Source: Macrostomum lignano
Taxonomy: Eukaryota
Assembly: GCA_002269645.1 (NCBI GenBank)
Contig: NIVC01000501.1
Location: 158,037 to 222,036 of the forward strand
Direction of reading: 5' to 3'
DNA length: 64,000 nt
Shown: positions 19,960 to 45,873 of the stretch, in pieces
How the letters are laid out: every line of letters starts with the position of its first letter
Position numbering within the stretch: position 1 is the first letter of the stretch
Notes under the pieces: generated by a model
Told to the model about the DNA's origin: nothing
Databases searched by the model: none
The model's input: only the letters and a program-made list of their open reading frames with translations
Made by a program: the position numbers and the translations under genes

Positions 19960-21475
19960 TCCACCCCACTCCATAGTGTACACACCCTCCGCAGCCGGCC
20001 CCACCCCACTCCACAGTGTACACTCACCCTCCTCACCCAACTCCACAGCGTAAAAACACACTCCTCCCACCCCACTCCACAGTGTACATAACCTCCGCAG
20101 CCCGCCCCACCCCACTCCACAGTGTACACTCACCCTCCCCACCCCACTCCACAGTGTACACAACCTCCGCGGCCTGCCCCACCCCACTCCACAGTGTACA
20201 CAACCTCCGCAGCCCGCCCACCCCACTCCACAGTGTACACAACCTCCGCAGCCTGCACCACCCCACTCCACAGTGTACACAACCTCCGCAGCCTGCACCA
20301 TCCCACTCCACAGTGTACATTCACCCTCCCCACCCCACTCCACAGTGTACACAACCTCCGCAGCCTGCACCACCCCACTCCACAGTGTACACAACCTCCG
20401 CAGCCTGCACCACCCCACTCCACAGTGTACACAACCTCCGCAGCCTGCACCATCCCACTCCACAGTGTACATTCACCCTCCCCACCCCACTCCACAGTGT
20501 ACACAACCTCCGCAGCCTGCACCACCCCACTCCACAGTGTACACAACCTCCGCAGCCTGCACCACCCCACTCCACAGTGTACATTCACCCTCCCCACCCC
20601 ACTCCACAGTGTACACAACCTCCGCAGCCTGCACCACCCCACTCCACAGTGTACATTCACCCTCCCCACCCCACTCCACAGTGTACACAACCTCCGCAGC
20701 CTGCCCCACCCCACTCCACAGTGTACACAACCTCCGCAGCCCGCCCCACCCCACTCCACAGTGTACACAACCTCCGCAGCCTGCACCACCCCACTCCACA
20801 GTGTACACAACCTCCGCAGCCTGCACCACCCCACTCCACAGTGTACACAACCTCCGCAGCCTGCACCATCCCACTCCACAGTGTACATTCACCCTCCCCA
20901 CCCCACTCCACAGTGAACACAACCTCCGCAGCCTGCACCATCCCACTCCACAGTGTACACAACCTCCGCAGCCTGCACCACTCCACTCCACAGTGTACAC
21001 AACCTCCGCAGCCTGCACCACCCCACTCCACAGTGTACACAACCTCCGCAGCCTGCACCATCCCACTCCACAGTGTACATTCACCCTCCCCACCCCACTC
21101 CACAGTGTACACAACCTCCGCAGCCTGCACCACCCCACTCCACAGTGTACACAACCTCCGCAGCCTGCACCACCCCACTCCACAGTGTACACAACCTCCG
21201 CAGCCTGCACCACTCCACTCCACAGTGTACACAACCTCCGCAGCCTGCACCACCCCACTCCACAGTGTACACAACCTCCGCAGCCTGCACCACCCCACTC
21301 CACAGTGTACATTCACCCTCCCCACCCCACTCCACAGTGTACACAACCTCCGCAGCCTGCACCACCCCACTCCACAGTGTACATTCACCCTCCCCACCCC
21401 ACTCCACAGTGTACACAACCTCCTCAGCCTGCCCCACCCCAAAGTGTATACACCCCTCCCCAGCCTGCCCCACCC
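19960..21475. repeat. GTGTACA-core minisatellite (CCCCACTCCACAGTGTACACAACCTCCGCAGCCTGCACCA ~40 bp plus a shorter variant)
   Basis: Two alternating unit types; source of many overlapping repetitive ORFs. Confidence 0.95.
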
Positions 21476-24167: not shown

Positions 24168-25566
24168 CTAGAAAGTGTTCTTCTTGCCAGTCGAGTCCAT
24201 CATGTTGATGCTGATCTCGTAGAACACGTAGGGATGATAGGCCTGCTGGGTGGGCATGAGGCCGGTCATCTCCGCGCCGCCCATTTCAACCGGGGTGCCG
24301 CCCATGTGGTCCAGGTAGCGATAGGTGCTGGCCAGGGTGTCGCGGAGCTTCTTGGCCGTCTTGCGGTTCGGCCGCATCAGCACGGGCTGAGGAAGGGATT
24401 TGGAATTTTTGGATTTGGGAATGGAATTTAAGTTTCAGGTCAGAGTGGGAATTTGAGGATTAAGACTCAAGTGGGATTTAAGGATCGAAAATCAAGTGGG
24501 ATTTGAGGATCGGGACTCAAGTGGGATTTAAGGAGCGGGACTTAAGTGGGATTTAAGAATCGGGACTCAAGTGGGATTTAAGGAGCGGGACTCAAGTGGG
24601 ATTTAAGAATCGGGACTCAAGTGGGATTTAGGGATCGGGATTTAAGTGGGATTTAAGGGTTAGGACTCAAATGGGATTTTAAGGATCGGGACTCAAATGG
24701 AATTTAAAGGTTGGGACTCAAGTGGGATTTAAGGGTCCGGGACTCAAGTGGGATTTAAGGGTCCGGGACTCAAGTGGGATTTAAGGGTCCGGGACTTAAG
24801 TGGGATTCGAGGATCGGTGGGAATCAAGTGGGATTTAAGGGTTGGGATTCACGTGGGATTTGAGGATCGGGAGTCGGGACTCAAGTGGGATTTCAAGATC
24901 GGGACTTAAGTGGGATTTAAGAATCGGGACTCAAGTGGGATTTAAGGAGCGGGACTCAAGTGGGATTTAAGAATCGGGAGTCAAGTGGGATTTAGGGATC
25001 GGGATTTAAGTGGGATTTAAGGGTTAGGACTCAAATGGGATTTTAAGGATCGGGACTCAAATAGAATTTAAAGGTTGGGACTCAAGTGGGATTTAAGGGT
25101 CCGGGACTCAAGTGGGATTCAAGGGTTGGGATTCACGTGGGATTTGAGGATCGGGACTCAATTGGGATTTCAGGATCGGGATTAAAGTGAGATTTGAGCT
25201 CCTGAGCATCAATCTCACCTGGAAATTAACCGGCAGGCCATATCGCAGCACGGACTCAACAAAAACTCGCAAAGCTTTGATGTGAACCCAGGCAATGAAC
25301 GACTCGGAGAAGTTGACGCTTAGCCAGCGAACCAGCGGCGCGTACTGGCGCTGCTTGTCGTCAGCCAGTCGGGCTCGCTCGTTTTTCGAATCCTGCAAGC
25401 TCTTCTCGTCGTAGACAAAATCGCGAACCATAAATTTGTTCTCTCGGCACTTGTGCTTGAAGTCATCTTGGCAACGGCGGAACAGGGTCACCGTCACCAG
25501 CATGTGGTCTGAGTCCTGCGGGTAGGGCGGGTGTGATTACTTAGTTTAGTTAGTTAGTTAGTTAGC

Positions 25567-25597
<31 letters not shown>

Positions 25598-26336
25598 ATA
25601 GTCAGTTAGTTAGTTAGTTAGTTACTTAGTTAGTTACTTGGTTACTTAGTTACTTAGTTAGTTAGTTAGCTAGTCAGTTAGCTTATTTAGCTACCTGAGT
25701 AACCAGCTGAGAGCTCCTCGGCACAACAAAGTCGGCCAGCCGCTCGTACTTCAGCCACCAATCGTTGGCGGAGGCCTGCGGCACCACAACCAACAAGGTG
25801 ATCAAGTAGTCGCTATCCAGCACAAAATGCTCGCGCTTAACCAAAGCTCCCAGATTCTTAGTCATCAAACTGCCTGTCTCTTTGCGATCCAATTGGCTCA
25901 AATTGTTCTTCAAGTCCAAATAGTTTTTCGCACGAGTCTTCAAATCTGCTTCGATTTTAGCCACCTGCCCAACAATGATCTCTGTTAGGCTGGGCAGCGG
26001 CTGCTTCGGCGGGTACTTGCCAGTCTCCCAGGTGAACCTGGTCAGGTAGGACTCGAGATCTAGTCCATTAACCTTCAAGCTCTCCTGCAGCTTAGTTTGA
26101 CCACCTTCGAGAACATCGCTTAGAACACTGACAACCCGTCTAGTTGTGGCCTCGCAGAATGTGTCGTGTTTAGCCAGTTCATCCGACAGGCCAACCAGCA
26201 CGTCCAAGGTGCCAACCTTCAGTTCTGGCGTGTTGAACTTCCAGTTCACCGACAATGTACTAGTGATGGCATTCAGCTTATCAAATGCTTGCTGGGGAGT
26301 TTTCTCGCCAGGCAGGGAGATTAGCCAGTAGTCCAT
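24168..26336 (-). CDS. ATP6V1C1: V-type proton ATPase subunit C, 385 aa, 3 exons
   Basis: Exons 26336-25695, 25515-25219, 24386-24168 (phase 0, 1158 nt). [92 protein letters not shown]. Confidence 0.97.
24440..25190. repeat. Degenerate ~24-28-bp minisatellite in V-ATPase C intron 2 (GGGACTCAAGTGGGATTTAAGG...)
   Basis: Direct tandem units filling most of the intron. Confidence 0.9.
25540..25682. repeat. (TTAG)n/(CTAA)n microsatellite in V-ATPase C intron 1
   Basis: Tetramer run filling most of the 179-bp intron. Confidence 0.9.
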
Positions 26337-27604: not shown

Positions 27605-28440
27605 ACAAGAACAACAATAACAAAATACGCGACCTCGCATGCACAGTCACAGTTAAAGCAGTGCATGTCAGATAGCACGCCGCAGAGCCTGGGAGCAAAT
27701 AAAGTCTGCTCTGTTGGCAGTGTTGGGCGCCCCAGCATTGCACAGCAGGCAGTCTACATATTGGCGGGTTTGGGCCTGACCCCGCTAAGTGAGTAGCAGG
27801 ATGTCCTGAACAGGTTGGGGGCAGTAGCCCTCGGCCCAGATCATGTGACCTGCCAGTTGAAGTTGCCACTGGTGCAGGATGATAGACGGACGCTGCAGCT
27901 TGGCCCAATCATACAGGGCCTTGGTCCCGACACTCTTGTCAGCTCAAAAGGCCACATGCCACATAGAGCAGCCCTGAGTGCGCCGAGTCCAGCTGCTACT
28001 CTAGCATAGCTGTCAGTGTCCACGTCTCAGTGTTATAGAGCAAGATGGATTTGACTACTGCCTGCCACAGCCAAGCCCTCTGGCAGTTGGGCAGCACTTC
28101 AGACTGGAGGATGGATTGGATCAAACAAATGGCTGCCCAGGCAAGTCCTCTGCGCCGCCAAAGATCTTCTTCCACATGGGCACTAGACTGCCAAGGTAGG
28201 TGAACCACTGGCAGCGTGCAAGCCTGGTTGTTTGCCTATCTGCACCGCAACACGTCAGGTCCACTGGGATGTCGGCCAGCACAATCAGCACCTCGGTCTT
28301 CAGCATTTTGATGATCAGACTGATGCTCAATGCCACCTCAACCAGCCCATCAATCTGGCGCTGGGCACCTTCAATGGATGAGGACAGGAGGGCAACGTCA
28401 TTGGTGTAGCCAAGCATGCTTAGATGCTATTTGCCGTGGT
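27605..28440 (-). mobile_element. Decayed non-LTR retrotransposon (LINE, RTE/CR1-like) 3' fragment, left part
   Basis: Minus-strand remnants LGYTNDVALLS (degenerate YADD box), FTYLGS, SILLYNTETWTLT, SQALRRAI*, then a TTG/TTA-rich tail. Contains stops and frameshifts. Confidence 0.8.
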
Positions 28441-29711
28441 CCAGGATGGAATTCTTGCACGAAAGTTGTTACGCGTTTGTGCGCGCTTGTCAAATTCGTG
28501 CGCGCTTGCGCGCTTGAAAGGGGCCTACGTGCGCGCTCTCATGAAAGGTATGTGCGCACTTGTGCGCGCGTGCGCGCTTGCGCGCGCGTGCGCGCTTGTG
28601 ACCCCTTGCGTGCATAAGTGCGCACATTTTTAAAAAAAATTGCAGAGATGTCCCTTCGACGAGTGAGAAAAAAACATCATTCATGTAAGTACAGTACATG
28701 TAATACCACATACAAATATACATGTAATGCATATTAATTTATAATTGTACGTATATGATCCGTCAAAATCCGACCCATTTTCGCCCCAATGTTATGTTTT
28801 TGCTTTTGAGGAAATTGAAACGTTTGATGCACCATTCGTAAGAACAAGTTTTTAATATTTTAAATACGGATTTGATTCTATGTTCGTTCAATATACCGTA
28901 AATTCCCAGCTTTATTAATTGGCCGTGTTGTCTGAACTCTTTCCTACATTTTCTCAGAGATTTTAAGAAAAAGTCACTACAGTCTTTAACAAATGCGAAA
29001 AGATGAATTTACTTTCTCATTTTTTTAATCTTTGCACAATTAACTGTTTTGAAATTTCACGTTAAACCATTTGCTTAACTTTTTTTCTAAGAAATACTAA
29101 TATTTTACGCGTACAATTTCTTTAGATTTGAAGTGACTATGCGAATGGCATTGCCAGCCATCGGTGATGGCAATTGGCAAACAATCAATATAGCGAGTTT
29201 AGTTTTCGAGTTTTATTGAAGGGCAACTGCAGTGCCTAAAATAAAAAGAATCGAACAATTTACACTTATAATTTGGACTAATTGGACTCAGACATTTTGT
29301 TTTTGTATAGGATTTCATAACTAAACTAGCCTACAGCCCTACTACACATAGGGCCATTAAGAATTAAGATTAAGATATTGGCTATTAAAAAGCTTTCAGT
29401 GTCAAGCATAAGCCATGAGGCAGGTCAAAGGTTTATACATTATGATTTGGAATTTATCATTTGATTTATACTTTTTATTTTTGTAATTTTTTTCAATACT
29501 ACACTGCAAGTCTGCAATACTATTTTAAAACTAAAAGCTATAGTGTTTATAAATAACTTATATATAGTTCCACTGTTTGTTTCAATAATACTAAAATAGT
29601 AATATTTATTAATACTAATAATAAGAAATAAAATCTTTTATTTTCAGATTATTTTTTAACTGATCTGCATCTTAGCATCTACAACATTCAATAAGACAAC
29701 ATCATATCATA

Positions 29712-32700
29712 ATGGCTTTCCTTGCTGTTGTGCCAGGGATTTGGACAATTGCCATTATTTCATATCTTATGATAACTGCCAAAGACACAATTGATATTGA
29801 AAATGAAATCCAGGCCCCACCAGAACCTAGTCCTACTGGCACTCCTTTGCTTTTGCAAAGAGCAACTGTTTCTGTTTTTACTGCTAGTCCAATTGACAAT
29901 AGCAGTGGTGCTGGATCCATTCCTAGGCCAGATTCACCTATCACTATTACTACTACCCCTTCTGTAAATCGAGAGGATGGACAAGCTTTTTCCTTTGGTT
30001 AGTTAAGATTATTTAACATTGAATATATAGTTTAAATAGGATGGTATATTTCAAACTTTTCAATTAAAGTAACTGCTATTCAAATTTCTTTTTTTAGAAT
30101 TATGGGGCCAAGATAAAGGTGCTGGTTCTAGTATGTCTTCAGGCCAGTCACAGCCACTAGGCCTTGCCTTTCAGGATAGAGGTCCTAACATTTTTATATG
30201 TAAGGAATGTTATCTACAAGGAAAGGTAAATTTGGTTCACTATTTCTAAATATTATTTATATATATTGTTTTCAATAGTTTGATTATTATAGTTGAAATA
30301 TTTTAGTTGAAGTACACTGTCTCTCAAAAGAGAGACAAGGATCGGCACACTGCGAGTAAATTCCACACTGCCAAAACTTGCAATTTGGTTAGGAATTCTT
30401 CCCAGGAGGCCATCTTGCTTGTTAGAGGTATGGCTTAAGTTTTTTTAGAAGTATAACTTCATCTGTTTTTTTGATCATTTCTATTTACTACTTCATAACT
30501 ATTTCACTTTCAGAACATGAAGCTGCTAAAACACATAGGACTTCAAAGAGATCTCATCCTGTTGCTGCACCAGATGAAAGAGAGACCATTTCATGTAATT
30601 TAAAGTGTTTCTTATGGCTTTTTACACATTTTACAATATGCTTTTAGAATGAGCAACACATTAATATAAAAGAAAAAATGAATTTTTAGCTTCTAGCGAT
30701 ACTGAGGCACCTCAGGCAAAGAAGACTCATTCTGAGGCTGATCGCGAAGAAAGTACTACTCTACCACCAACAAACTCTGGTGTAATAAACCCATCCTGTG
30801 CTGGTGACTGTGCCAATGCATTTTCCGATCTTGTTAAAAAACTGCCTAGTATGATAGGAGATATAGTTGAAAGAAAACTCGCCTTTGCCTTTGAGACATT
30901 AGGTAAGCCATCTGAGAATTCCAATCGAAGTCACAGCGCAAGTGTAACTAACAGCGAGTTTGTATTGGACTTGGAGAAGTGGATGACGCTAAACTCTATT
31001 GTAGACATAGCGCGGGAAGTCCCAGACATAGAATTATTTTTGAATGAAGAAGATGGACACTCTGTAGTAAGGTGTAAAACATGCTGGGAAGCTTTAGATA
31101 CTCGAAAGCTGAGTAAAATGTCTGTTTTTCAAGTGTCTCGTCACTATAGTGATAATTGCACATTGGGCACAGGTGTTTACATGAATCCCAGCGAAACTGA
31201 GTTGATTATAAAAGGGACTTCTAATAAAAAAGATACACAGTTTTGGCGAAATTTCAAGAGCAAACTGCGAGGGCATCTTTTAGGGTCATCAAATAATTCA
31301 CAGGGACGGCAGCATGCGCTCTCTGTAAAAAAACAAAAGGATCAAGCAGAAGAAGACAAACTATCTCACGAAATTGCTAAACGCTTAGTCCGCTCAGCAA
31401 TCCAAACTATTAGATCCAAGGCTGGTGCTGTACACTATGAAAATCAAGTAACTTTTCTAGAACTCAATGGCTGTCAAATTGGAAATCGGGGGCACGGAAG
31501 AAAACAGCTTTCAATTATTATTAATGCAGCTAACGAATGGATCAATGATGAAAACCGGAAGCTTCTTTTGACGCCATTGGAGTCTACAGGTCTCCCTCCA
31601 CATTTCATGGGAATTGTTGATAAAGCGACACAGACCCGCGAGACAAACCAGGCTATCTTGCTTGCAACTATAAGCCGAGGGGAAAGAGTCGCATTCCCAG
31701 TTGGTGCCCCATGTGTTTATTTTGTACAAAATGAAGACGTCTGCGAGGAGAACTCCAGTGCTTCAGTAAATAGTGATGTTTCTGATTCTGGTGAATCGAA
31801 TGAATCAGATTCTGACACAAGCACGAGTTAGGACTTAGATCGCGTAGTAGTTACTAGGGGGAGTCTGGCTGAGCTAGCGCAGCTTATCTTTCGCACGATT
31901 CAAGATGAATTAAAACTGGGGGAAAAGGACCTCTTGCGGTATTGTGGTACAGCAGCTGATGGCCAGTATCAACCGGCAATGTTTGCAAATGAAGTAACCC
32001 GCTTGTCAGGGCGTAGCAATATCGCGGACAGTTCTACATTTCAACCTGTAATATGGGATGTATCGCACTTACTTAATTTAGCGGTGTTAGATGTTCGCGA
32101 GTCAAAGTACGGTAAACCTGCGGCAGATTGCTTAACATTGTTTATTGAAAGGGCCAACGAGTTTAACCATTTAATGGGAAGGGGCAAAAACCATACTTTA
32201 ATGTCAAAAGTGGCGTCCAAAATGAAGGAAAAAGTGTCTGTACCAATACCATATGCAACACAGCGATTTACAAGCTCATCTGTTAAGCAGTGGGTCAAAA
32301 TTGAAAGAGCTTACAGTCTGTATGCAGCAACTTTTCGTCGCATTCACGATGAAGATGAAGACTTTCCCCTCCAATATAGGGTTTTGGGAGCAGACTTTGC
32401 TACCGATCTGTGTCTGCTACTAGATGTGTTTCAACCACTAGTTGAAATGATGGAGCTGGCCCAGGGATTGCAATTCAATCACTGGAAAATTGTTTCATGG
32501 GGAATCGCCTTCTACAAATGATGGATAGAAAGTGTCGTCCATTATATGACAAGCACCGAGCTGACATTGAAGGTATGAGCTTTAAGAAGGTGCGGCTTCT
32601 AGAGGGCTGGCATGTAATTGGCGAAGAATATGTCGGGCAAGAAGCAGAAAGTAGTCGAGGAAGACGTCGGAGGTGTAATAAGAAGAAAGTATACCTTTGG

Positions 32701-33648
32701 GAGGAGAGAACAACTAATGATGCAGTCAGAGAGGTCGAAGTCGTTTCCAGCTCTCTCCGTCAAAGTGTGGCTAATCGATTAAATAAGGGAACCTCAGCAT
32801 GCTCAAATATCTTAGCCAAGTTTATGGACTTTGAGCAGCTACTATACCTTTTATGTGGTTCCCGTGAAACTGCTTCCAATGGTACAGCCAAGCCTATTCG
32901 GCAGTGCATAAACTTTTCTGGCTTCATGGAGGCTGGTGAGCCAGAGTTTTGTTCGTTTTTTAATTATGTGGTTTCACTCCCATATATTTCTGAGGTGGCT
33001 GAATCAGACGAATTATTTTCAGAACTGATACTTGGAAACCATAGCTACGTACATGTAAAGTACAAGAATGTTATTGAATCCCTCTTTTGGGGTCACCTTG
33101 CTCCGTATGGGATACAGTGCCTTGTATGTTCCAAGTCAAAAAAGCCAATTAAGGGCCAAATCATTAATTCCATAAAAATTGAAGAGAATTCGCGCCTCCA
33201 GCAGGTTTTTAAAGTTGAAACTGATGTACGCTGTTATGACAACTGTATTCTGGATGAGGCAGCACTTATAAAACAATTATACACAGTTCAACCAGTCTTT
33301 GAAGAAGCTGGTCGAGCTGTGTGCATTCTTCTTGACGTTGCACTGAACACAGGTGGTGGGGAGGCAATTGCTGAAAGTTTCTACGGCGTAATGCGTAGCC
33401 AACGCATTATGGGAAGGCAAAAAAATAAAGCCTTGCAGTTGCGAACGAAGATCGATTGGTGCCTCCCGCCCATCAGCTCTCTAATCGAACGTTCAGTCAA
33501 CGAAATCGCCTCTAAGTATTTAAAGATTGCGGCATGTCCACTTGCATCCGATCCCCGTACCATCCGCGGATATTTAAATAGTGGGTTTAGAAGCGCAGTT
33601 CAGCGCCGAAAAAATTGTGTTAAACCACGGTTGGGCCACCTCGTGTAA
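29712..33648 (+). pseudogene. Spliced hAT-like transposase gene (~1,190 aa) with one nonsense codon and one frameshift
   Basis: Phase-consistent exons 29712(or 29676)-29997, 30098-30225, 30307-30427, 30514-30594, 30690-33648. C2H2 finger CKEC...H..SKFH, TTF-like RCKTC...WRNFK..L.GH...H, putative DDE motifs GIVDKAT / AADGQ / AIAESFY, DxxH motif WDVSHLLNL. TAG at 31829-31831 (frame continues); -1 shift at ~32498. Confidence 0.82.
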
Positions 33649-34021
33649 TGCCGACTGTAACGTCTGACTAGCATTTATACGCAAGTTGAAATGAACCACA
33701 ATGCATGTACAATGACTTGTTAAGATGTTTGACTCAATAAATCATTCGCTATATAATGCGTAAACAATTCAGAACTCTCCAGGCAATAACCACAAATGGA
33801 CAAGCACACCAGCACGCTTAGTGCAACAAAACTTATATTTGTCTTGAATTTTAGAATGAGGGGACGCTAATAATATGCCTAGCGTACATGAAGTGCGGGG
33901 CAGATAGAAAAACAAGAGTGGGGGGTTTGTACTTGTACCTAGGCATGCAGGCCACAGAGAAAAGGACAGAAATGAAGATGGGACGACGCAGCACAGAGAG
34001 GGTTGAATGTACATCTAGCTA

Positions 34022-34269
34022 CAGGGGCGGATTTGGGGGGCGTCCCTAAAATAAGTACTTTTGACGGAACATAGTGCACCCCCAGAAAAAGCCAAAGTTT
34101 GCGCCCCCCCCCCCTAAACTTGATTTTTTCGCCCCGAAACACCATTTTTTGCGCCCTAAGCTAATATCTTATCGCCCCCTACATGCATTTTTAAGCCCCT
34201 AAATTGGCACCCTTATACTCGTGTTGGCGCCCAAACTTAGACCGCCCCCAAAAAATTGATCTGCCACTG
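34022..34269. mobile_element. 248-bp hAT-type MITE nested in the right arm of the large transposon
   Basis: Imperfect TIRs CAGGGGCGGAT / CAGTGGCAGAT. Flanks TCTAGCTA (34014-34021) vs TATAGCTA (34270-34277), a 7/8 TSD. Confidence 0.7.
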
Positions 34270-34804
34270 TATAGCTACATGTAACTTGCAGGAAGGGCAA
34301 AGAAAAATCATTATTTTAATTAAACATGTACATGAAACGCAACATTTCGATTTGAATTTTGCGACAATATACATCAACCCAACTATACTAAATCCAACTA
34401 TACTAAACGTCTAATATTATACTAAAAACATAACTGTACTAAAATTGTCATTTTTGCAGGTGTTTCTCTTTTTTTAATTAATTAAAAGTTATTATTAAAA
34501 CAAAAATATACACAGTTGCATACATGTACTCAAAAATATACAAAGCAATATTTTTTATGAATGTAAAACGTGTCATTATCTTTTTTGTTGCCTTACTCGT
34601 AATTGCATAATCGAAAAGCAAAAATAGTAGCAAATGTACACAAAATACTTCGATTGTTAAAATTTGATAAAATTTGTATACAACATGGTTATGTGCGCTC
34701 AAGTTCTCTTATTTTTAGCTGGCGACCCTGGCGTGCGCACTTGCGCGCTGCTCCAAAAACGTGCGCGCGCGTTTTCCTTCCTCTGAGCAAGAATTCCATC
34801 CTGG

Positions 34805-34910
34805 GCCGTGGTGGCAACCGATACATCTGCATAGCAGGCAGCCATTATTAGCCAAAAGGAATAAGGTCCAAAGTACCCAGTCTAGCAGCACTATGTAATA
34901 CTCCTTTAAG
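34805..34910 (-). mobile_element. Right-hand remainder of the same LINE RT fragment split by the transposon
   Basis: After removing the transposon and one TSD, the minus frame reads IVLLDWVLWTL...HHGK*HLSMLGYTND, i.e. the RT segment directly N-terminal to the YADD box. Confidence 0.7.
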
Positions 34911-36703: not shown

Positions 36704-39700
36704 ATGGCGTCAACCCTTGACAGCATTCGCCCGCCGCCTATATTGCCTCCACTTCGGGGCATCTATGCTGGCAAATATAAGGACAGAAATCCCGATTTGA
36801 AAACTGTAAGCATTGATATCACATATTATAAAAATTATAATATTCAGCTAAACAGCACAATCATATCAAATAAACTTAATACGATTCTAGGCTGGAATAG
36901 TCAGCGATGTTGGAGGAGACACTGCAGCTACCGCTACCAAAGAAATGGAACGTGTAAGTAGCTAATTAGTAGTATATTTCGCCTAGAACTGTCTGTGTAC
37001 ATAAATATTGTTTTAAACGAAATCCACAGGCCGAGTCGCCGGAACCTACAAAAAAGTTTCACCGAACTTTTCGCTCGGAGCCCGGCGAACGAATCGTGTT
37101 TTATGGCAAAGCCAGCGATCCGCAACTGCGCTGGGCGGAGCGCATGACTCACGGAATCAAGTATCCGAAAGGGTGAGTGGCTGAGTGCTGAGCACGGAGA
37201 GATAACGTAATACACGTTGCTTTTTTTCTATCCTCTCTACCATACGCTTATTGCATCGGATTAGGTGTGACTTGGGTTAACACACCTGGTTAGACAGGAC
37301 TATCACACCTGGTTGTACAGGATTATCCACCTGATTAGACGGGATTATCCACTTGATTAGACTGGATTATCGCACCTGATTAGATAGGAATATTGCTCCT
37401 GGTTGGATGGGATTATCACACCTGGTTAGACAGGATTATCGCAAGACAGGATTATCGCACCTGGTTAGACATGATTATCGCACCTAGTTGAACAGGATTA
37501 TCGCACCTAGTTAGACATTATTATCGCACCTGATTAAACAAGATTATCGTACCCCAACTAAAACTCTGTTTCAAACTAAAACTCGCCGCAGCGAGGGCGC
37601 GGGCGGTGTCCTGAACCCGACGCCGCTAACCTTCTACCAGCAGCGATTCATGGACCGCCTTGAAGCCGCTCAGGTGAACGCCAAGAAGCGACCGCTCGGC
37701 CGGTGCCCCGACGGCCGAGAGATGGGCCTGCTGCCGCAGAATCTGGACAAAGACAACACCACGTTCGGCATCACTGTGGAAAAGAGTGAGTCAACTGTAT
37801 AAGTGTATTAACGCTCTTGGGACTAAGACTTCCACGTCATAGGGCCATGCTTCGTGAATCTCATCATATTGAAGATTAGCAATTTCCAATAATCCAGGAT
37901 TCCATACTTTCATATCTGAATAGCCCAGATTTCTTGCTACTAGATAAAAAATTCGAGATTCCCAAAGTAAATATCACAAAATCCCAAACTAAAGATCCTC
38001 AAAATCCTAAACTAAAGATCCGAAAATCCGAAAGTAAAGATCACTAAATCTCTAAGTAAAAATCCCAAATTCCAAAAGCTAAGATCCCAAAAATCCCAAA
38101 GTACAGATCCCGAAAATCCGAAAGTAAAGGTGAGAAAATTCCAAACTAAAGATCCTCAAAATCCCATACTATAAATCCTCAAAATCCCATACTATAAATC
38201 CTCAAAATCCCATACTATAAATCCTCAATATCCCATACTATAAATCCTCAAATCCCATACTATAAATCCTCAAAATCCCTTACTATAAGATCCTCAGAAT
38301 CCCAAAGTAAATATCCCAAAATCAAAAAATCCCGCCAAACCGACCCACGCGCCCAGTCGGTTCAGCTGGCGAGCTGCTCAACCCGTCTGCCACGCCAATC
38401 GAACTGGCCACGGAGGCGGCCAGCGACGCGAACACCTACCTGGTGTCGCACAAGGCCCTGCTGGCCGGAGAACAGGCCAGCCGCGGCTACAATTGGCGAC
38501 TAAAAGACGCCGGCGGCGCCAAACGCTGGGGCAAGCCGACGCCGCACGACAACACCGGGGGCGGCACGCGCAAGTGCATGAGCTGGATAGGGGACGAAGC
38601 GGCGGCCAGGCGGGAGGCTCTGGTAGACAAACGGCTGGATGATTTTCGAGAGCGAACTCAGCATCAGTTGGGCAAGAATCTGGATCCGTGAGTTCCATAT
38701 TCATAAATTGATCCCCTATTCATAAATTGAGCCCATATTCATAGATTGATCCCATATTCATAAATTCATCTCATATTCAAATGGATTTCAAATTTAGATT
38801 AAGACCAAGTACTATTCATGTCATATATCAGTATTCCATTGATCGCATATATTCATATAAATGTGCATATATTTAAATACCATTGATCGTATTGATCTGA
38901 TTATTGATCCCATTGATCATTAATCAGTATTCCATTGATCGCATATATTCATATAAATGTGCATATATTTATCCCAAAAATATTCCACAATAAATGGTTC
39001 TCTAAGTACGTCAAAAATGAACTCTACCTGCGTTTCTCTTAACTTCCCTATGTGCAGCATCAAGGACACGATGAAGGTGCCGCCGGACCACACTTTCGGC
39101 GTCCTGCACAAGCCCGATCCCTACGGAGTCGGCGACCTGTTGCACGGTCGGGCGCCCAAGCATTTCCTTCGCGGCGAGGACCGGCGCCGTGCTCTGGTCG
39201 CCGCGCTGCGCACCCAACTGAAAACTATGAACTACGAGCGCTTCAAAGATCTTGAAGACGCGTTCCGATTCTACGACAAGTCCGGCTCCGGCAAGTTGAG
39301 CGCTGACGACATTCGCGCCGCCTGCCGAGAGATGAGCGTGCCGCTGGACGACTCGCTGCTCGAACAACTTATCGACTTCTGCGACGTCAACGGCGATGGG
39401 CTAATCGACTATCAGGAGTTTGCCAACTTCCTCAACTGGAGAGATATTAGTGAGTATGATGAGGTTTTAGTATGGAAAGACTAGCAATCTGCGCCCCGGT
39501 TGAGGCCGAGGCAACAAAGAAAGAAATGGGAATTTTCGAATAAACAACATACAGGTCTTGAGCTAGTATATATTAATTGCAATCGTTGATTTCTTTGGTA
39601 TGGAATTTGACTAGCCCCCCGTCCTTAATTGGAGTGGTGATTTTAGTATAGAAGACTAGCCAACCCCCCCATTGAAGTGGTGATTTTAGTACAGAAAGAT

Positions 39701-41819
39701 TAGCCAACCTCCATTAGGGTGGTGATGTTAGTATATAAAGACTAGCCAACCCCCCCATTAGATGGGTGATTTAAGTATAGCCAACCCCCCCCCCCATTGG
39801 AGTGGGGATTTCAGTATAAAAAGACCAGCTCTTCTACCCCTCTGAAGAAGCATCCAAGAGAGAGATTCCATCATTTAAACGCGTAAAATCAGTGCCAGCC
39901 CAATTAGAAGTGTAAACTCGGCATCTTTATCACGAGCTCAGCAATAAGTAATTTTCTAATTCAATGCTCCAAGTTGGTTACTATCAGTAAAGTAGAAGCA
40001 GTCTTAAAATAAGACTTTAATTTTCGCATTAGAATGTGCATGTTTCAATATCTTGAAACAATACGTTCCTCATCCGTTTCTGCTAATTACTATGAATAGA
40101 TTAGATCTCGTCCTGGTACAGCTAGATTAGACTTATAGGGCTAGATTTGCCCGTTAAGAACACTGATCAGGTTCTATTTTGTTTGAATCGACGCAAATTG
40201 CATAGCAAATAAGCTCAAAAAGAGAACAGACAACTGCGGAAGTAATCAGCTCGATGTCAATGCAGCAATGCCTTAGAATTATTGAGTGTAGCATTTCGTG
40301 TTGCCTTTTGACAAGAGGAAACTAATTTCCCGTCAAGAGAATCCCAGGCCTCTTCGAATTGCTGTGCATTGTACACTCTACTTTAGCTGCAATTGTCACT
40401 AAGAGTAATAAACCTCTCAGAACAAAATGATTGACACACAGACACGTAGACACATTAGCCTGTTAGGTAATATTGGGTCAATGAGTCGCGGAGATATAAT
40501 TTTAGTATTCTAATTTTTGACCCACTACTGACCCACACCCAACCCTTGACCTACTCAGGCGTCCGCTCCCAGTCGGACTACGGCAAGCGAACTCTAGACA
40601 GCGAGGCGCGGCTCGCTCGCCAAATCGACGAGTCGATCTCGGCTCACAAGACTACCAACAGCATGTACTCGGCCGCTGTTGGCCGCTACGATCCAACCAG
40701 GTTTCGAACCTACGGCTGCGCCACCATCCGCTCCGACCTACCGGCCCCGGCCGTGCGCAGCGTGTCGGATCGGAGGGCCTACGGCAACGAGGGCGACGCG
40801 GCCTCCTGCCTCAATCCGAGCATCTTCACGTCGCACGGCGTGTTTGAGCACGATCTCAAAGCGCCTAGATCGGCGGAGGAGGTCCGTTTTAGCGATTGCG
40901 TTTCCCTGATTGGGCGGAATTGGATGGGGGTTGGATGGAAGAGAAAGGAGAGAAGAGAGTGGAGACAGAAAAGACAGGAGAGAGAAAAGAGAATGGAGAA
41001 GAGAGAGAAGACATGAGAGAAGAGACAGGAGAGAAGAGAGAAGAGAGAGGAGAGAGGAGAGAAAAGACAAGAGAGAAGAGAGAAGAGAGACGAGAGAAGA
41101 GACAGGAGAGAAGAGACAGGAGAGAGAAGAGAAGAGACAGGAGAGAGGAGAGAAGAGACAGGAGAGAGAAGAGAAGAGACAGGAGAGAGGAGAGAAGAGA
41201 GGAGAGACAGGAAAGAAGAGAAACGAGAGAAGAGACAGGAGAGGGGAGAGAAGAGAGAAGAGACAGGAGAGAGGAGAGAACAGAGAGGAGAGAAGAGAGA
41301 GGAGAGAAGAGAGAAGAGACAGGAGAGAAGAGACATGAGAGAAGAGACAGGAGAGAGGAGAGAAGAGACAGGAGAGAAGAGACATGAGACAGGAGATAGG
41401 AGAGAGAGAGAGAAGAGATGAGAGAAGAGAGAGAGAAGACAGGAGACAAGAGACAGGAGAGGGAGACACGAGAGAATAGAGAGGAGAGAATAGAAAAGCC
41501 TTACTCTTTACTCTTAAGAGTAATAGTTTAGGATTTCAAAACTAACTTCAAATTCGAAATTTGCTCGCAATGTGAGAAACTTTGAAGCTTTGAAGACACC
41601 TGCTAAGCATTCAGTTTCAATTTCTGCCTCTGTTTCCGCGCAACCACCTCGCAGATATCTGGCATCTTCTCGGCGGCCGGCATCAGCCTGGACGACAGTC
41701 TAGTTCGTCGAGCATTCGATTTGGCGGGCGCTGACCGGCTGGGCATTGACGAGTTCCGCAAGGTTTGGGCCCGGGCCGCGGCTGAAGATGCGGCCTCCAA
41801 CACCGAGGGCTGCTGCTGA
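36704..41819 (+). CDS. EFHB: EF-hand domain-containing family member B (CFAP21), ~570 aa, 8 exons
   Basis: Exons 36704-36805, 36891-36953, 37030-37172, 37592-37785, 38357-38687, 39058-39449, 40559-40881, 41655-41819 = 1713 nt in frame. VFYGKASDP, RPLG, DDFRERTQHQLGKNLDP, TFG...YGVGDLLH, two EF hands (FYDKSGSGKL, CDVNGDGLIDYQEFANFLNW), GCATIRSDLPAP, GVFEHD. Confidence 0.93.
37262..37550. repeat. ~23-bp minisatellite in EFHB intron 3 (CACCTGGTTAGACAGGATTATCG)
   Basis: Degenerate direct repeats. Confidence 0.85.
37950..38330. repeat. AAAATCCC-core tandem array in EFHB intron 4
   Basis: Degenerate units such as AAAATCCCATACTATAAATCCTC. Confidence 0.8.
38695..38970. repeat. ATTCATAAATTGATCCCAT-type array and local duplication in EFHB intron 5
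   Basis: Short degenerate repeats plus a duplicated ATCAGTATTCCATTGATCGCATATATTCATATAAATGTGCATATATTTA block. Confidence 0.75.
39470..39820. repeat. ~41-bp degenerate array in EFHB intron 6 (GTGGTGATTTTAGTATAGAAGACTAGCCAACCCCCCC)
   Basis: About 5 copies. Confidence 0.75.
40940..41495. repeat. Purine-rich GAGAA/GAGAG/GACAG array in EFHB intron 7
   Basis: Low-complexity tandem run. Confidence 0.92.
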
Positions 41820-42919: not shown

Positions 42920-45873
42920 TCAAATAGAATTTCTCTTCAACAGGCAAGCGTAGGCGTGCAGGCAGCGCATCACGAACAGGTAGTGCGCCTCGTTGGCCAC
43001 AGCCAGCGGGCACTGCCGCCTGAGTCCGGCCGCCAATCTGAGCAGGTCGCAGGACGCCACTCCGCCTCCGCCTCCGGCGTCCGTTAGTCGAGTCCGCTTT
43101 GCTGCCAGCAGCAGCAGCGGCAGCAAGCTCGCCTCCGAGAGTCCCCGCCCGATCGCGGCCGTTGGCGTCGCCGATGTCGTCGGCTGGTTGGCGGCGCAGG
43201 CGTGCGCAAACCGGACAAACTCGGCCGGGGAAGCTGGCGAACTGTCCGGGCTGCGGCTCAAGCCGCCGGCCAGCTGGCACACTCGGATGCGCTTGCTCAG
43301 GTTGCTGTCCAAGCAGTGCATGGTGGCCGTGGTCACCGAGTGGCAGGGGAAGCTGCTGCGCGCCCAGCCGGTCAAGTAGAACCTGGACGATGATGTCGAA
43401 GTTGTCGATCGACTTTCCAGCCAGCCGACAAAGCCCGGGTCCAGCGACACGGCGGCGCCGCCGCAAGCCCAGAGCAACTCCAGGAAGCGTTCGTTATCGT
43501 TGTCGCCGTGGCCGGAGGCGTCCGCCAGCACGAAAGAGAGCCCGGTCTGTCCAGGCTGGCTGGAGGCGTCACCGACCCAGTAGAATGCCGCCGCCGTCGC
43601 TGCTGACGCCGCATCGCTGCCACCAGCTGGCGATCCGAGCCGACTAAACTGTCGGCGAGCTTCGGCCTCGTCGACGTCGCCTACCGCGCGAAATCGCGTC
43701 ACCCGCGACGGCAGCGCACCGTTAGCTTCGTCGTCGCCTTTCATCGCTGTGAAGTCGCTATCATCGTAGTCGGGATTGTAGGCGAGATTCAGCCATCCCA
43801 TGCTGGATAGCCGCGGTCCCGCAGGCAGCGGCGGGCGGACAATCCAGCTGGCAGCCGTATGTGCTTGCATCGGCTGAAGCTCCAGCTCGACAGTCGTCTC
43901 AGACTTAGGCTGCTGCTGTTGCTGCTGTTGGTCCCTGCGCAGTTGGACCTGAGGCTCACAAGATGTGGCTCTGCCCAATATGCGACGAGTGATGAGTACA
44001 ATTAGTTTGTTTATCTTTGTTGCTTTAGCGGACTCTAGACTCCCTCCTAACTGCAATAATCCTAACTCCTCTTTTGGAACCTTTCTACTCCTCCCGGCAC
44101 CCACCTCACGCCGTAGCTTTCCACACCCTCATTCTATACTATTTCTACCCCTCCCAGCACCCACCTCACGCCGTAGCTTTCCACACCCTCATTCTATACT
44201 ATTTCTACCCCTCCCAGCACCCACCTCACGCCGTAGCTTTCCACACCCCCATTCTAAAACATTTCTACCCTCATCTTATCTTTTTTTCTCGTCACCTTAA
44301 TTTTTGCACTTTAACATTCGTTCAGACCGTTCTCACCCATCAGATGTGCACTCTTGCTGCTGCTGCTGCCGTTGCTGCTCCTTCACCCGTTGCCGCTTGA
44401 CCAGAACAACAGCCGCAAGCGCCGTGAAGGCGACGAAGGCTACAAAAACAACAGTGGATGCGATGGCTGCCATCTCGCTTCCGCGACTTGAAGCTGGAGA
44501 ATTATCGCCGGGCGAGGGACAGCTCCCGTTGCCATCGATGATACAGTCCCCTCTGGCCCAGAATGTAGCGTTGAACTTGGCGCAATCGCCTAAGCCTGGC
44601 AGACTGCTGATGCCGGTTCGAAGTCTAGCGGCTTCTTGTTGGAATGCCGCCCTGTTGGCCGGGTCGGCCAGCTCACCGGCTGGCGTGAGCAGGTCCAGTC
44701 GGACGAGGTAAACTGAGGCCTCGGTGGTGGATTCGCTGTCTGAAAAAAACGCGTTCAGAATATTGCGATTCTAGAATTAATGGCATTCTCTTTTGATGCT
44801 AAAGTATTTGTAGAGCTTTAGGGAACCTAGGAGCTATTCTAAGGGGAGGGCGATTCTCGGAAAGAGAGGTTCTCGGGTGGGGCGATTCTTGGGGAGGGCG
44901 ATTCTAATAGAGGGTGATTCTAATGGAGGGCGATTCTAATGGAGGGGGATTCTAAGGGAGGGCGATTCTAATGGAGGGCGATTCTAAAAGAAGTTGATTC
45001 TAATGGAGGGGGATTCTAAGGGAGGGCGATTCTAATGGAGGGCGATTCTAATGGAGGGGGATTCTAATGGAGGGCGATTCTAATGGAGGGCGATTCTTAT
45101 GGAGGGCGATTCTAATGGAGGGGGATTCTAATGGAGGGCGATTCTTATGGAGGGCGATTCTAATGGAGGGGGATTCTAATGGAGGGCGATTCTAATGGAG
45201 GGCGATTCTAATGGAGGGCGATTCTAATGAAGGGCGATTCTAATGGAGGGCGATTCTAATGGAGGGCGATTCTAAGGGAGGGCGATTCTAATGGAGGGCG
45301 ATTCTAATGGAGGGGGTACTATTGGAGGGCGATTTTAATGGAGGGCGATTCTAATGGAGGGGGATTCTAATGGAGGGCGATTCTAATGGAGGGGGATTCT
45401 AAGGGAGGGCAATTCTAATGGAGGGCGATTCTAATGGAGGGCGATTCTAATGGAGGGCGATTCTAATGGAGGGGGATTCTAAGGGAGGGCGGTTCGGAGG
45501 GCGAGGTGAACATGGATCACAAACACACGCAGAACAGCTATAGCCCCGGCAACAGCCCCAATCCTATACCTTTAAGAAGCCCACCGCTCGCTGCCAGACA
45601 GGCAGGGGTGCTCGGCGAACTGTTGAAGGTCTGGTCGCACGCAGCCATCTGGTGACTCAGTTCTGCCAGGCTGGAGTTCACCCGCTGCCACACCTTGGGC
45701 AGGTACTGAACAGCGAATTCGTTGCCATGCTGAGACGGGCATTCGAATAGCAATCGAATACTTCGGTCTAATACCATTCTGTGACCTGTGCCGGTTGGTC
45801 TGGCAGCCACAGAACTGGCCAACAACAGACACACGATGGTCAGTTGCTGTGAAATTGAACTATTGGCAGCCAT
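42920..45873 (-). CDS. Type I membrane protein with a degenerate cytoplasmic protein-tyrosine-phosphatase-like domain (receptor pseudophosphatase), ~585 aa, 3 exons
   Basis: Exons 45873-45570, 44739-44337, 43970-42920 = 1758 nt in frame. Signal peptide (MAANSS...LLLASSVAA), 6-Cys ectodomain, TM AIASTVVFVAFVAFTALAAVVLV followed by KRQR, then PTP-like remnants in order (YNPDYDDS, RFLELLW, SPDSSPASPAEFVRF, TAAIGR, LRRQCPLAVANEAHYLFVMRCL). The gene model is well supported; the PTP assignment is moderate. Confidence 0.72.
44085..44270. repeat. 60-bp x3 tandem repeat in intron 2 of the PTP-like gene
   Basis: CCCACCTCACGCCGTAGCTTTCCACACCC... recurs at 44101, 44161 and 44221. Confidence 0.9.
44842..45492. 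repeat. 16-bp minisatellite in intron 1 of the PTP-like gene (GGAGGGCGATTCTAAT)
   Basis: About 40 direct copies. Confidence 0.93.

What the first reader, a model, noticed from the sequence alone, without database searches (positions are those of the whole stretch)
29676..30850. The transposase gene has at least four spliceosomal introns and an N-terminal zinc finger assembled across an intron
Seen: GT-AG introns of 100, 81, 86 and 95 nt (29998-30097, 30226-30306, 30428-30513, 30595-30689) with phases 1/0/1/1 that join the pieces into one frame. Splicing of intron 2 creates FICKECYLQGK|LKYTVSQKRDKDRHTASKFH, a C-x2-C...H-x5-H finger that the ORF track does not show. A second TTF-like finger follows (RCKTC...WRNFK...H...H). 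These introns are short, AT-rich and repeat-free, unlike the host introns. Inference: alternative or tissue-specific splicing could regulate activity, as established for the P-element germline intron.
Basis: partly seen in the sequence, partly recalled or inferred. Interest (0 to 1): 0.72.

Follow-up and report, generated by a model that had tools for sequence, protein, structure and literature searches.

The report
Intron-bearing hAT-like transposon, defective copy
The four short introns and the split zinc finger are real and already present in RNA-based GenBank gene models of the flatworm Macrostomum lignano; they belong to the transposase gene of a young 6.4-kb cut-and-paste transposon of the hAT kind, a design already known from Ac and Tol2, so the finding is correct but ordinary.

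Summary
The four GT-AG introns have the stated coordinates, sizes and phases, are 16-26% GC against 41-45% for the exons, and join one frame.

The window is Macrostomum lignano contig NIVC01000501.1. GenBank's RNA-seq-derived models (BOX15_Mlig007445g1 at this locus; Mlig019669g1 and g6 at paralogous loci) use the same four junctions.

The gene sits in a 6,364-bp DNA transposon at 28441-34804. It has perfect 18-bp terminal inverted repeats and 8-bp target duplications. It occurs at five or more unrelated loci at 99.7-99.9% identity.

An AlphaFold model (pLDDT 79) matches only the Hermes hAT transposase. D, D, D-x2-H and E are conserved across the family.

Both zinc fingers are conserved in distant relatives. 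There the region matching exons 2-5 is one uninterrupted ORF, so at least introns 2-4 are specific to this lineage.

The window copy is defective, with a CAG>TAG nonsense at 31829 and a 1-nt deletion near 32498. One intact 1191-aa copy exists elsewhere.

Regulation by alternative splicing is untested. Intron-bearing hAT transposase genes are already known: Ac, BuT2, and Tol2, whose shorter mRNA product lacks most of the BED finger.

The parts
28433..28440 (.). Left 8-bp target site duplication, GCCGTGGT
   Evidence: The same 8 nt occur at 34805-34812. Four other insertions each carry their own 8-bp duplication.
28441..28458 (+). 5' terminal inverted repeat, CCAGGATGGAATTCTTGC
   Evidence: It is a perfect 18-bp inverted repeat with 34787-34804. 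Homology with the other copies starts exactly here. The motif CCAGGRTGNNNTYC is shared with the TIR of a distant relative in L008.
28469..28609 (+). Subterminal GC-rich short repeats (GTGCGCGC core); candidate transposase-binding sites
   Evidence: There are 8 copies of a 22-nt unit. GTGCGCGC occurs 7 times in the window, all inside the element, against 0.7 expected. Copy number differs between copies. Binding is inferred, not shown.
29712..29997 (+). Exon 1 (the annotated CDS starts at ATG 29712); 96 aa with a hydrophobic N-terminus and no homologue
   Evidence: It is in frame with exon 2 after splicing, is annotated in P0010 and P0011, and is 42% GC like the other exons. Whether it is translated is not settled.
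29998..30097 (+). Intron 1, 100 nt, phase 1
   Evidence: GT..AG, 20% GC, stops in all three frames. The junction FSF|ELW appears in GenBank models P0001, P0010 and P0011.
30098..30225 (+). Exon 2; encodes the C-x2-C knuckle at 30199-30210
   Evidence: and the sequence read.
30226..30306 (+). Intron 2, 81 nt, phase 0; splits the N-terminal zinc finger
   Evidence: GT..AG, 16% GC. The junction LQGK|LKYT appears in the GenBank models. The matching position lies inside one uninterrupted ORF in P0002-P0004.
30307..30427 (+). Exon 3; encodes H-x5-H (His codons at 30346-30348 and 30364-30366)
   Evidence: The first His (H64 of P0001) is invariant in the family.
30428..30513 (+). Intron 3, 86 nt, phase 1
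   Evidence: GT..AG, 26% GC. The junction LVR|EHEA appears in the GenBank models.
30514..30594 (+). Exon 4
30595..30689 (+). Intron 4, 95 nt, phase 1
   Evidence: GT..AG, 22% GC. The junction TIS|SSSD appears in the GenBank models.
30690..33648 (+). Exon 5: the second zinc finger, the catalytic core and the C-terminus; broken in this copy
   Evidence: It is 99% identical to the intact P0010 and P0001. The AlphaFold model matches Hermes transposase.
31073..31315 (+). Second, TTF-like zinc finger (C31073, C31082, W31244, K31256, H31274, H31313)
   Evidence: These six residues are conserved in 19-27 of the roughly 27 aligned family members that cover the region. The model has pLDDT 82-92 here.
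31619..31621 (+). Predicted catalytic Asp 1 (VDKAT)
   Evidence: D in 29 of 32 aligned members; coordinates. It lies on a predicted beta strand. The catalytic role is inferred.
31829..31831 (+). Premature stop TAG (CAG in all five other copies)
31958..31960 (+). Predicted catalytic Asp 2 (AADG)
   Evidence: D in 30 of 33 aligned members.
32057..32068 (+). D-x2-H motif (WDVSHLLNL)
   Evidence: D in 32 of 34 and H in 30 of 34 members.
32494..32499 (+). 1-nt deletion in a G run, causing a frameshift
   Evidence: All other copies carry one more base here; the frame change is shown. It may be a real mutation or a long-read homopolymer error.
33373..33375 (+). Predicted catalytic Glu (EAIAESFY)
   Evidence: E in 20 of 21 members that cover the column.
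34787..34804 (-). 3' terminal inverted repeat
34805..34812 (.). Right 8-bp target site duplication, GCCGTGGT

Best explanation
Window 28441-34804 is one copy of a young cut-and-paste DNA transposon of Macrostomum lignano, belonging to or very close to the hAT superfamily.

Its single gene is transcribed as a pre-mRNA. The host spliceosome must remove four short introns, all within the first ~980 nt of the gene, before translation can give a 1191-aa transposase.

The protein has four parts:
- an N-terminal BED-type CCHH finger, whose Cys knuckle is in exon 2 and whose His helix is in exon 3;
- a second TTF-like finger;
- an RNase-H-like D,D,E catalytic core interrupted by a large helical insertion domain;
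- a C-terminal helical region.

The enzyme presumably recognises the 18-bp terminal inverted repeats and the GC-rich subterminal repeats. It would then excise the element and reinsert it with a staggered 8-bp cut.

The copy in the window cannot make transposase because of a nonsense codon and a frameshift. It keeps both ends, so an intact copy (contig NIVC01000608.1) could move it in trans.

Shown here: element boundaries, TIRs, TSDs, dispersed near-identical copies, the exon-intron structure as used in RNA-based models, the fold match, and the conserved residues. Inferred: catalysis, DNA binding by the fingers, and current activity. The introns are most simply constitutive. Nothing here shows regulated splicing.
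For: - Junctions, phases and composition.
- GenBank models with identical junctions. They derive from RNA-seq assembly.
- The window is 100% identical to NIVC01000501.1.
- Homology to five other loci starts and stops sharply at 28441 and 34804. These loci have unrelated neighbouring genes.
- Perfect 18-bp TIRs and five different 8-bp TSDs.
- Copies differ by only 7-20 substitutions in 6.36 kb. One copy is intact.
- AlphaFold model: pLDDT 78.8, pTM 0.71. The top 12 Foldseek PDB matches are all Hermes hAT transposase, with probability 1.00, E 1e-4 to 1e-2 and target-normalised TM 0.48-0.59. The next superfamily scores E 0.07.
- D428, D541, D574-x2-H577 and E1013 are conserved across 37 family members.
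- A relative at 28% identity in L008 is also a transposon, with a 19-bp perfect TIR starting CCAGGGTG and an 8-bp TSD ATCGTTGG.
Against: - No Pfam hAT model matches (zf-BED, DUF4371, Dimer_Tnp_hAT), even at E<=1 in 37 members.
- Sequence-profile searches of PDB find nothing.
- Identity to Hermes is 8-9%, and the query-normalised TM is below 0.3 because the protein is twice as long.
- The five TSDs do not show the weak hAT target consensus nTnnnnAn, which I recall from memory.
- The RNA-seq behind the models was multi-mapped among near-identical copies, so which copies are expressed is unknown.
- The start codon was chosen as the longest ORF. Exon 1 has no homologue and encodes a hydrophobic N-terminus that is odd for a nuclear enzyme.
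Confidence: 0.85

Rival explanations
1. Splicing of these introns is regulated, by tissue or by stage. Intron retention would give truncated proteins that carry only the finger and act as repressors or restrict transposition, as with P-element IVS3 or the short Tol2 mRNA.
For: Retaining any one intron stops translation after 96, 145, 181 or 222 aa. Retaining intron 3 or 4 would leave a protein that contains only the BED-like finger. There is a precedent in hAT: Tol2-S, encoded by exons 2-4, lacks most of the BED finger and inhibits excision by Tol2-L (PMC4818426).
Against: Every transcript-derived model seen is fully spliced. No isoform or expression data were reachable: the gene identifiers occur in no searchable paper, and the protein cluster holds no transcript-derived members. 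The splice sites are canonical with good T-rich tracts.
Confidence: 0.12
2. Exon 1 is not coding. Translation starts at a Met in exon 2, so intron 1 lies in the 5' UTR and the CDS has three introns.
For: The 96 aa of exon 1 have no counterpart in any relative and begin with a hydrophobic stretch. One copy (L001) has a frameshift in exon 1 and is annotated from a later ATG. The start was set by a longest-ORF rule.
Against: The frame stays open for about 109 codons up to the donor site. Exon 1 has 42% GC like the coding exons, whereas the flanking DNA is AT-rich. Five of six copies keep the frame, although the copies are too similar for this to count as evidence.
Confidence: 0.3
3. The element belongs to another superfamily that makes 8-bp duplications, such as P, and not to hAT.
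For: An 8-bp TSD is not exclusive to hAT. No hAT Pfam domain is detected. The motif is D-x2-H, not the C-x2-H common in hAT.
Against: The N-terminal finger is CCHH, not a THAP-type C2CH finger, and no P-element Pfam family matches. No P-element transposase structure appears among the top 50 Foldseek matches, while Hermes fills ranks 1-12.
Confidence: 0.08
4. It is a multi-copy host gene, or a domesticated transposase duplicated by the recent genome doubling, and not a mobile element.
For: M. lignano is a neopolyploid with much duplicated sequence. L004 and L005 are the same insertion present twice.
Against: Similarity ends exactly at the TIRs. Flanks and neighbouring genes are unrelated at five loci, each with its own 8-bp duplication. 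Most copies carry disabling mutations.
Confidence: 0.02

Closest known systems
Tol2 / Tgf2 (hAT, teleost fish)
   Same: Both are autonomous hAT elements with short TIRs and 8-bp TSDs. The transposase gene is interrupted by introns (Tol2 has 4 exons). The N-terminal BED finger (Tgf2: Cx2Cx19Hx4H) is encoded near an exon boundary, so that an mRNA lacking exon 1 loses most of it (PMC4818426, PMC4890040).
   Different: The flatworm protein is almost twice as long (1191 against about 650-685 aa). It has a second TTF-like finger and a much larger insertion domain, and it matches no Pfam hAT model. No alternative mRNA has been shown for it.
Ac (maize) and BuT2 (Drosophila buzzatii)
   Same: Both are hAT elements whose transposase gene has five exons, that is four introns (PMC3260210; PMC3942097 abstract). 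They also have subterminal short repeats. From memory, the Ac TIR CAGGGATGAAA resembles CCAGGATGGAA here.
   Different: In the flatworm element the introns all lie in the first quarter of the gene. Intron positions could not be compared, and there is no detectable sequence similarity.
Hermes transposase (housefly; PDB 2BW3, 4D1Q, 6DWW, 8SJD)
   Same: It is the only solved structure family that the model matches: an RNase-H-like core with a helical insertion domain, aligned over about 700 columns. Both have a D,D,E arrangement.
   Different: Identity is 8-9%. The Hermes gene is intronless as far as I know (from memory), and the protein is about half the size.
Drosophila P element
   Same: Both make an 8-bp TSD. 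The P transposase gene has introns, and germline-restricted removal of the third intron controls activity.
   Different: P transposase has a THAP finger and a GTP-binding insertion domain. Neither is detected here, and no P-element structure appears among the fold matches.

Membership tests
hAT superfamily of DNA transposons | 8-bp target site duplication | tested here: met
   Five independent insertions each have a different exact 8-bp duplication. A distant relative in L008 also has one.
hAT superfamily of DNA transposons | Short terminal inverted repeats (about 10-25 bp) | tested here: met
   A perfect 18-bp TIR, and a 19-bp TIR in the L008 relative.
hAT superfamily of DNA transposons | TIR terminus of the YARNG type and weak target consensus nTnnnnAn or nnnTAnnn (both recalled from memory) | tested here: inconclusive
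   The TIR starts CCAGG. CAGGA, offset by one base, fits only partly. One of five TSDs fits nTnnnnAn and none has a central TA. Five sites are too few to judge.
hAT superfamily of DNA transposons | RNase-H-like DDE core interrupted by a large all-alpha insertion domain (Hermes-type fold) | tested here: met
   The AlphaFold model has pLDDT 78.8. Foldseek ranks 1-12 are all Hermes, with probability 1.0 and target-normalised TM 0.48-0.59. D, D and E are conserved. This rests on a predicted structure, not a solved one.
hAT superfamily of DNA transposons | C-terminal hAT dimerisation domain (Pfam PF05699) or other hAT Pfam domains | tested here: not met
   No hit for the window proteins or for any of 37 family members at E<=1. 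Sequence-level membership is therefore not shown. I file the element as hAT-like, not as a member of a named hAT clade.
hAT superfamily of DNA transposons | Excision through hairpins on the flanking DNA | not testable with these tools
   This needs biochemistry.
BED-type zinc finger (Cx2CxnHx3-5[H/C]) | Spacing of the four ligands | tested here: met
   Cx2Cx18Hx5H in the spliced product. The definition is as quoted in PMC4890040. Relatives have Cx2Cx~24Hx4H.
BED-type zinc finger (Cx2CxnHx3-5[H/C]) | Match to the Pfam zf-BED model; zinc binding | tested here: not met
   There is no zf-BED hit. Two relatives weakly match zf-C2H2_12, the Spin-doc finger, below its cut-off (E 1.9e-5, 24.7 bits against 27.3). 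In M. lignano the first His of the relatives' H-x4-H pair is Asp, and a His six residues further on is the presumed fourth ligand. The model here has pLDDT of only 50-77. Zinc binding was not tested.
TTF-type zinc finger (SMART ZnF_TTF; pattern recalled from memory) | C-x2-C ... G ... W-x3-K ... H ... H pattern upstream of a hAT core | tested here: inconclusive
   The pattern is present and conserved at C246, C249, W303, K307, H313 and H326, with a confident model. No TTF profile was available to score against.
P-element superfamily | THAP (C2CH) DNA-binding domain and GTP-binding insertion domain | tested here: not met
   There are no THAP or P-element Pfam hits. The finger is CCHH. No P transposase structure is among the top 50 fold matches.
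Spliceosomal (U2-type GT-AG) introns | GT..AG boundaries, a pyrimidine tract, and removal in mature RNA | tested here: met
   Boundaries and tracts are shown. Removal follows from the RNA-seq-assembled GenBank models. I did not see the reads myself.

The most novel reading that the evidence does not exclude
The element would represent a large, deep-branching hAT-like clade that has no Pfam model, with about 2,100 cluster representatives at E<=1e-3. One M. lignano copy would still be active. At least introns 2-4 would have been gained in the flatworm lineage, and their removal would be regulated, so that finger-only truncated proteins repress transposition outside the germline or neoblasts.
Probability: 0.1. 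Interest if true: 0.55.

Novelty: new member of a known kind. Interest (0 to 1): 0.28.

Why it matters
- As a claim about biology it adds little. Intron-bearing transposase genes and BED fingers next to exon boundaries are textbook features of hAT elements (Ac, Tol2, BuT2), and these particular exons are already in GenBank as 'hypothetical protein'.
- The first useful by-product is that seven GenBank 'hypothetical proteins' can now be named as copies of one hAT-like transposon, with defined ends.
- The second is practical. With one intact copy and copies 99.7-99.9% identical, this is a candidate endogenous active DNA transposon in the only flatworm with routine transgenesis. There, integration has so far been random or by piggyBac (PMC5730564, PMC8717057).
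- The third is that the transposase family is large and has no Pfam model, so it is worth curating.

Tried and rejected
- Pfam scans of the four ORF pieces, of ten long relatives and of all 37 alignment members gave no transposase domain.
- Profile searches of PDB sequences with 6 and with 37 sequences found nothing relevant.
- The first AlphaFold run, with 6 sequences, was unusable (pLDDT 45). I did not search with it.
- A second word-indexed homologue search with the alignment returned only the query's own cluster, so that search was wasted.
- A paper search for the gene identifiers Mlig019669 and Mlig007445 gave no hits, so no published expression class could be retrieved.
- I tested whether the introns are repeats or 'introner'-like. 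They show no similarity to each other or to the rest of the window beyond 8-20-nt chance matches, and no tandem repeats.
- I compared intron positions with the Hyalella azteca relative. Its predicted gaps all lie in the catalytic half. The first 407 aa are one block, which shows no gap in the N-terminal part. The locus does not translate to the model, so it is not informative.
- I considered a tiny GT..AG intron around the TAG at 31829 and rejected it. All other copies read CAG there and the protein aligns straight through.
- I considered the TTTTCAG at 29641-29647 as an upstream acceptor and rejected it. It exists only in this copy; the others read CAT at 29644-29646.
- Joining the two flanks did not restore a long reverse-transcriptase ORF.
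Full report
**1. The observation**

They are 29998-30097 (100 nt), 30226-30306 (81), 30428-30513 (86) and 30595-30689 (95).
- Each starts with GT and ends with AG after a T-rich tract. The exon lengths of 286, 128, 121 and 81 nt give phases 1/0/1/1.
- Introns are 16-26% GC and exons 41-45%. Reading through any intron in frame meets a stop within a few codons.
- After splicing, one frame runs from the ATG at 29712 to 31828. It contains FICKECYLQGK|LKYTVSQKRDKDRHTASKFH across intron 2.

**2. Source of the window and independent support**

- A protein search with the downstream ORFs found Macrostomum lignano BOX15_Mlig019669g1 at 99% identity.
- Its cluster holds six GenBank proteins.
- P0011 (BOX15_Mlig007445g1, 585 aa) is identical to the window's spliced product from Met1 to the stop at 31829.
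- P0010 (Mlig019669g6, 1191 aa) is the same protein without interruption.
- P0001 (1103 aa) starts later in exon 1 but crosses all four junctions.
- The window is 100% identical to contig NIVC01000501.1 over the 15 kb compared.
- The annotation of this assembly is not ab initio. It is a genome-guided transcriptome built with STAR, StringTie and TACO plus the de novo assembly MLRNA150904. Boundaries came from TBONE and ORFs from TransDecoder (PMC5730564).
The caveat is that reads were allowed to multi-map among near-identical copies, and I did not see the reads.

**3. What the gene belongs to**

- Comparing the window with the loci of the paralogous proteins shows homology that begins exactly at 28441 and ends at 34804.
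- Neighbouring genes differ at each locus: a RING/PA gene, Pcc1, V-ATPase C with an EF-hand gene, a Myb/CDC5 intron with a glycosyltransferase, and GLTP.
- The ends are a perfect 18-bp inverted repeat, CCAGGATGGAATTCTTGC.
- Each of five independent insertions is flanked by its own 8-bp duplication: GCCGTGGT in the window, then TGGCCATC, GCACTATG, GCGAATAT and CTGCTCAG.
- L004 and L005 are the same insertion present twice.
- The copies differ by 7-20 substitutions over 6.36 kb, which is 99.7-99.9% identity.
- Inside the 5' end lies an array of GC-rich short repeats with a GTGCGCGC core. It varies in unit number between copies.
- This is therefore a young 6,364-bp DNA transposon, and the finding covers the 5' quarter of its single gene.

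**4. State of this copy**

- Against the other five copies the window copy has C>T at 31829 (CAG>TAG). It also lacks one G in a G run near 32498, which shifts the frame.
- Other copies have their own single-base indels: L001 in exon 1, L004/L005 at 31327, and L006 at 30749 and 31856.
- Only L002 is intact.
- Several of these indels sit in homopolymers of a PacBio-based assembly and may be errors. The nonsense substitution is probably real.
- The window copy is thus non-autonomous but keeps both ends.

**5. Family of the protein**

- Pfam finds nothing in the window's pieces or in relatives. PDB sequence-profile searches also find nothing.
- An exhaustive profile search shows the family is large. 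There are 2,123 cluster representatives at E<=1e-3 and 270 at E<=1e-30.
- An AlphaFold model built on 37 of them has mean pLDDT 78.8 and pTM 0.71. The core is mostly above 90.
- Foldseek against PDB returns Hermes hAT transposase in ranks 1-12, with probability 1.00, E 1e-4 to 1e-2, about 700 aligned columns and target-normalised TM 0.48-0.59.
- The next hit is a bacterial ISCth4 transposase at E 0.07. No P-element transposase is listed.
- Across the family, D428 (VDKAT), D541 (AADG), D574-x2-H577 (WDxxHLLNL) and E1013 (EAIAESFY) are nearly invariant. In the window they map to 31619, 31958, 32057-32068 and 33373.
- With the 8-bp duplication and short TIRs this makes the element hAT-like. Because no hAT sequence model matches, I do not place it in a named hAT clade.
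- A relative at 28% identity (P0003, locus L008) is itself a 4.86-kb transposon. It has a perfect 19-bp TIR, CCAGGGTGCATTCCATGTA, and an 8-bp duplication, ATCGTTGG. The two elements share the terminus CCAGGRTGNNNTYC.

**6. The zinc fingers**

- The N-terminal finger is Cx2Cx18Hx5H, which fits the BED definition Cx2CxnHx3-5[H/C] quoted in PMC4890040.
- Relatives have C-L-x-C followed by about 24 residues and then H-x4-H.
- The two Cys and one His (H64 of P0001) are conserved. In M. lignano the relatives' other His is Asp, and a His six residues downstream is the likely fourth ligand.
- The model shows a hairpin followed by a helix there, but with pLDDT of only 50-77.
- Intron 2 falls between the Cys knuckle (30199-30210) and the His helix (30346-30366).
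- The second finger is conserved and confidently modelled. Its pattern is C-x2-C ... W-x3-K ... H ... H at 31073-31315. It has the TTF-type pattern as I recall it, but no TTF profile was available to score it.

**7. Age of the introns**

- P0002, P0003 and P0004 are each encoded by one uninterrupted ORF covering everything homologous to exons 2-5, including the finger.
- Introns 2, 3 and 4 are therefore absent in those lineages. The simplest reading is gain in the flatworm lineage, though loss elsewhere is not excluded.
- Intron 1 lies in a region with no homologue and cannot be compared.
- The identity of the introns in all six M. lignano copies, with only one T-run indel in intron 3, says nothing about constraint because the whole element is equally conserved.
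- The introns are not repeats.
The introns of the two neighbouring host genes are packed with tandem repeats. The published mean intron length is 1.1-1.4 kb.

**8. Mechanism and the regulatory idea**

- The best-supported account is an ordinary hAT-type cut-and-paste element whose mRNA needs four constitutive splicing events.
- Retaining an intron would end translation after 96-222 aa. Retaining intron 3 or 4 would leave a finger-only protein. That is how a repressor could arise.
- Tol2 offers a hAT precedent: Tol2-S lacks most of the BED finger and inhibits Tol2-L (PMC4818426).
- No isoform or tissue data could be reached, so this remains a hypothesis at about 10-15%.
- Exon 1 is also unresolved. 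It keeps a 109-codon open frame and exon-like composition. However, it encodes a hydrophobic N-terminus with no homologue, and the start was set by a longest-ORF rule.

**9. Comparison and verdict**

- Ac has a five-exon transposase gene (PMC3260210). BuT2 also has five exons (PMC3942097). Tol2 has four, with the BED finger near an exon boundary.
- The finding is therefore a correct reading of the sequence and a new member of a known kind. Its exon structure is already deposited, although the proteins are labelled only 'hypothetical'.
- The modest added value is the definition of the element, its hAT-like identity, its very recent activity, and the existence of an intact copy in a transgenesis-capable flatworm.

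Noticed in passing
window 24444-25195 and 25537-25690 (V-ATPase C gene, minus strand); 37277-41498 (EF-hand/EFHB-like gene): Host introns are largely built of tandem repeats: a 25-bp unit x29, TTAG x38, several 19-96-bp units, and GAAGAGA x80.
   Followed up: partly
window ~27900-28440, continuing after 34813, minus strand: The transposon sits inside a degenerate LINE-like reverse-transcriptase fragment (ORF 28121-28417, '...YTNDVALLS...'). Joining the flanks does not restore a long ORF.
   Followed up: partly
window 28469-28609; L004/L005 and L002 at the matching positions: The subterminal GC-rich repeat array varies between copies. L004/L005 have one extra 19-bp unit and L002 has a 26-bp deletion.
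   Followed up: no
window 29644-29646: This copy alone reads TCA where all others read CAT. The change creates a TTTTCAG acceptor-like site and removes a short upstream ATG present in the other copies.
   Followed up: no
window 29712-29997 (exon 1): Exon 1 encodes 96 aa that start with a membrane-anchor-like hydrophobic stretch (MAFLAVVPGIWTIAIISYLMITA) and have no counterpart in any relative. This is odd for a transposase.
   Followed up: partly
window 31740-31870 (P0001 residues ~465-505): There is a roughly 45-aa acidic, Ser-rich insertion (EENSSASVNSDVSDSGESNESDSDTSTS...) between the third strand and first helix of the core. It is absent in relatives and disordered in the model. The window's stop codon lies within it.
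   Followed up: no
L008 4657-9512: The 28%-identical relative is a complete 4.86-kb transposon with a 19-bp TIR and an 8-bp TSD. A separate 57-aa ORF upstream of its main ORF (5291-5464) matches Znf_SCAND3. It may be an extra exon or a frameshifted N-terminus. The neighbouring gene has Connexin and NACHT/LRR domains, which suggests a fish host.
   Followed up: partly
L004 and L005: The same insertion, with the same TSD and flanks and 99.97% identity, is present on two contigs. These are homeologous or haplotig duplicates in the neopolyploid assembly.
   Followed up: no
window 20001-21000 and 43001-44000: These blocks are unusually GC-rich (62% and 66%), the first with a strong negative GC skew (-0.65). 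I did not examine them.
   Followed up: no
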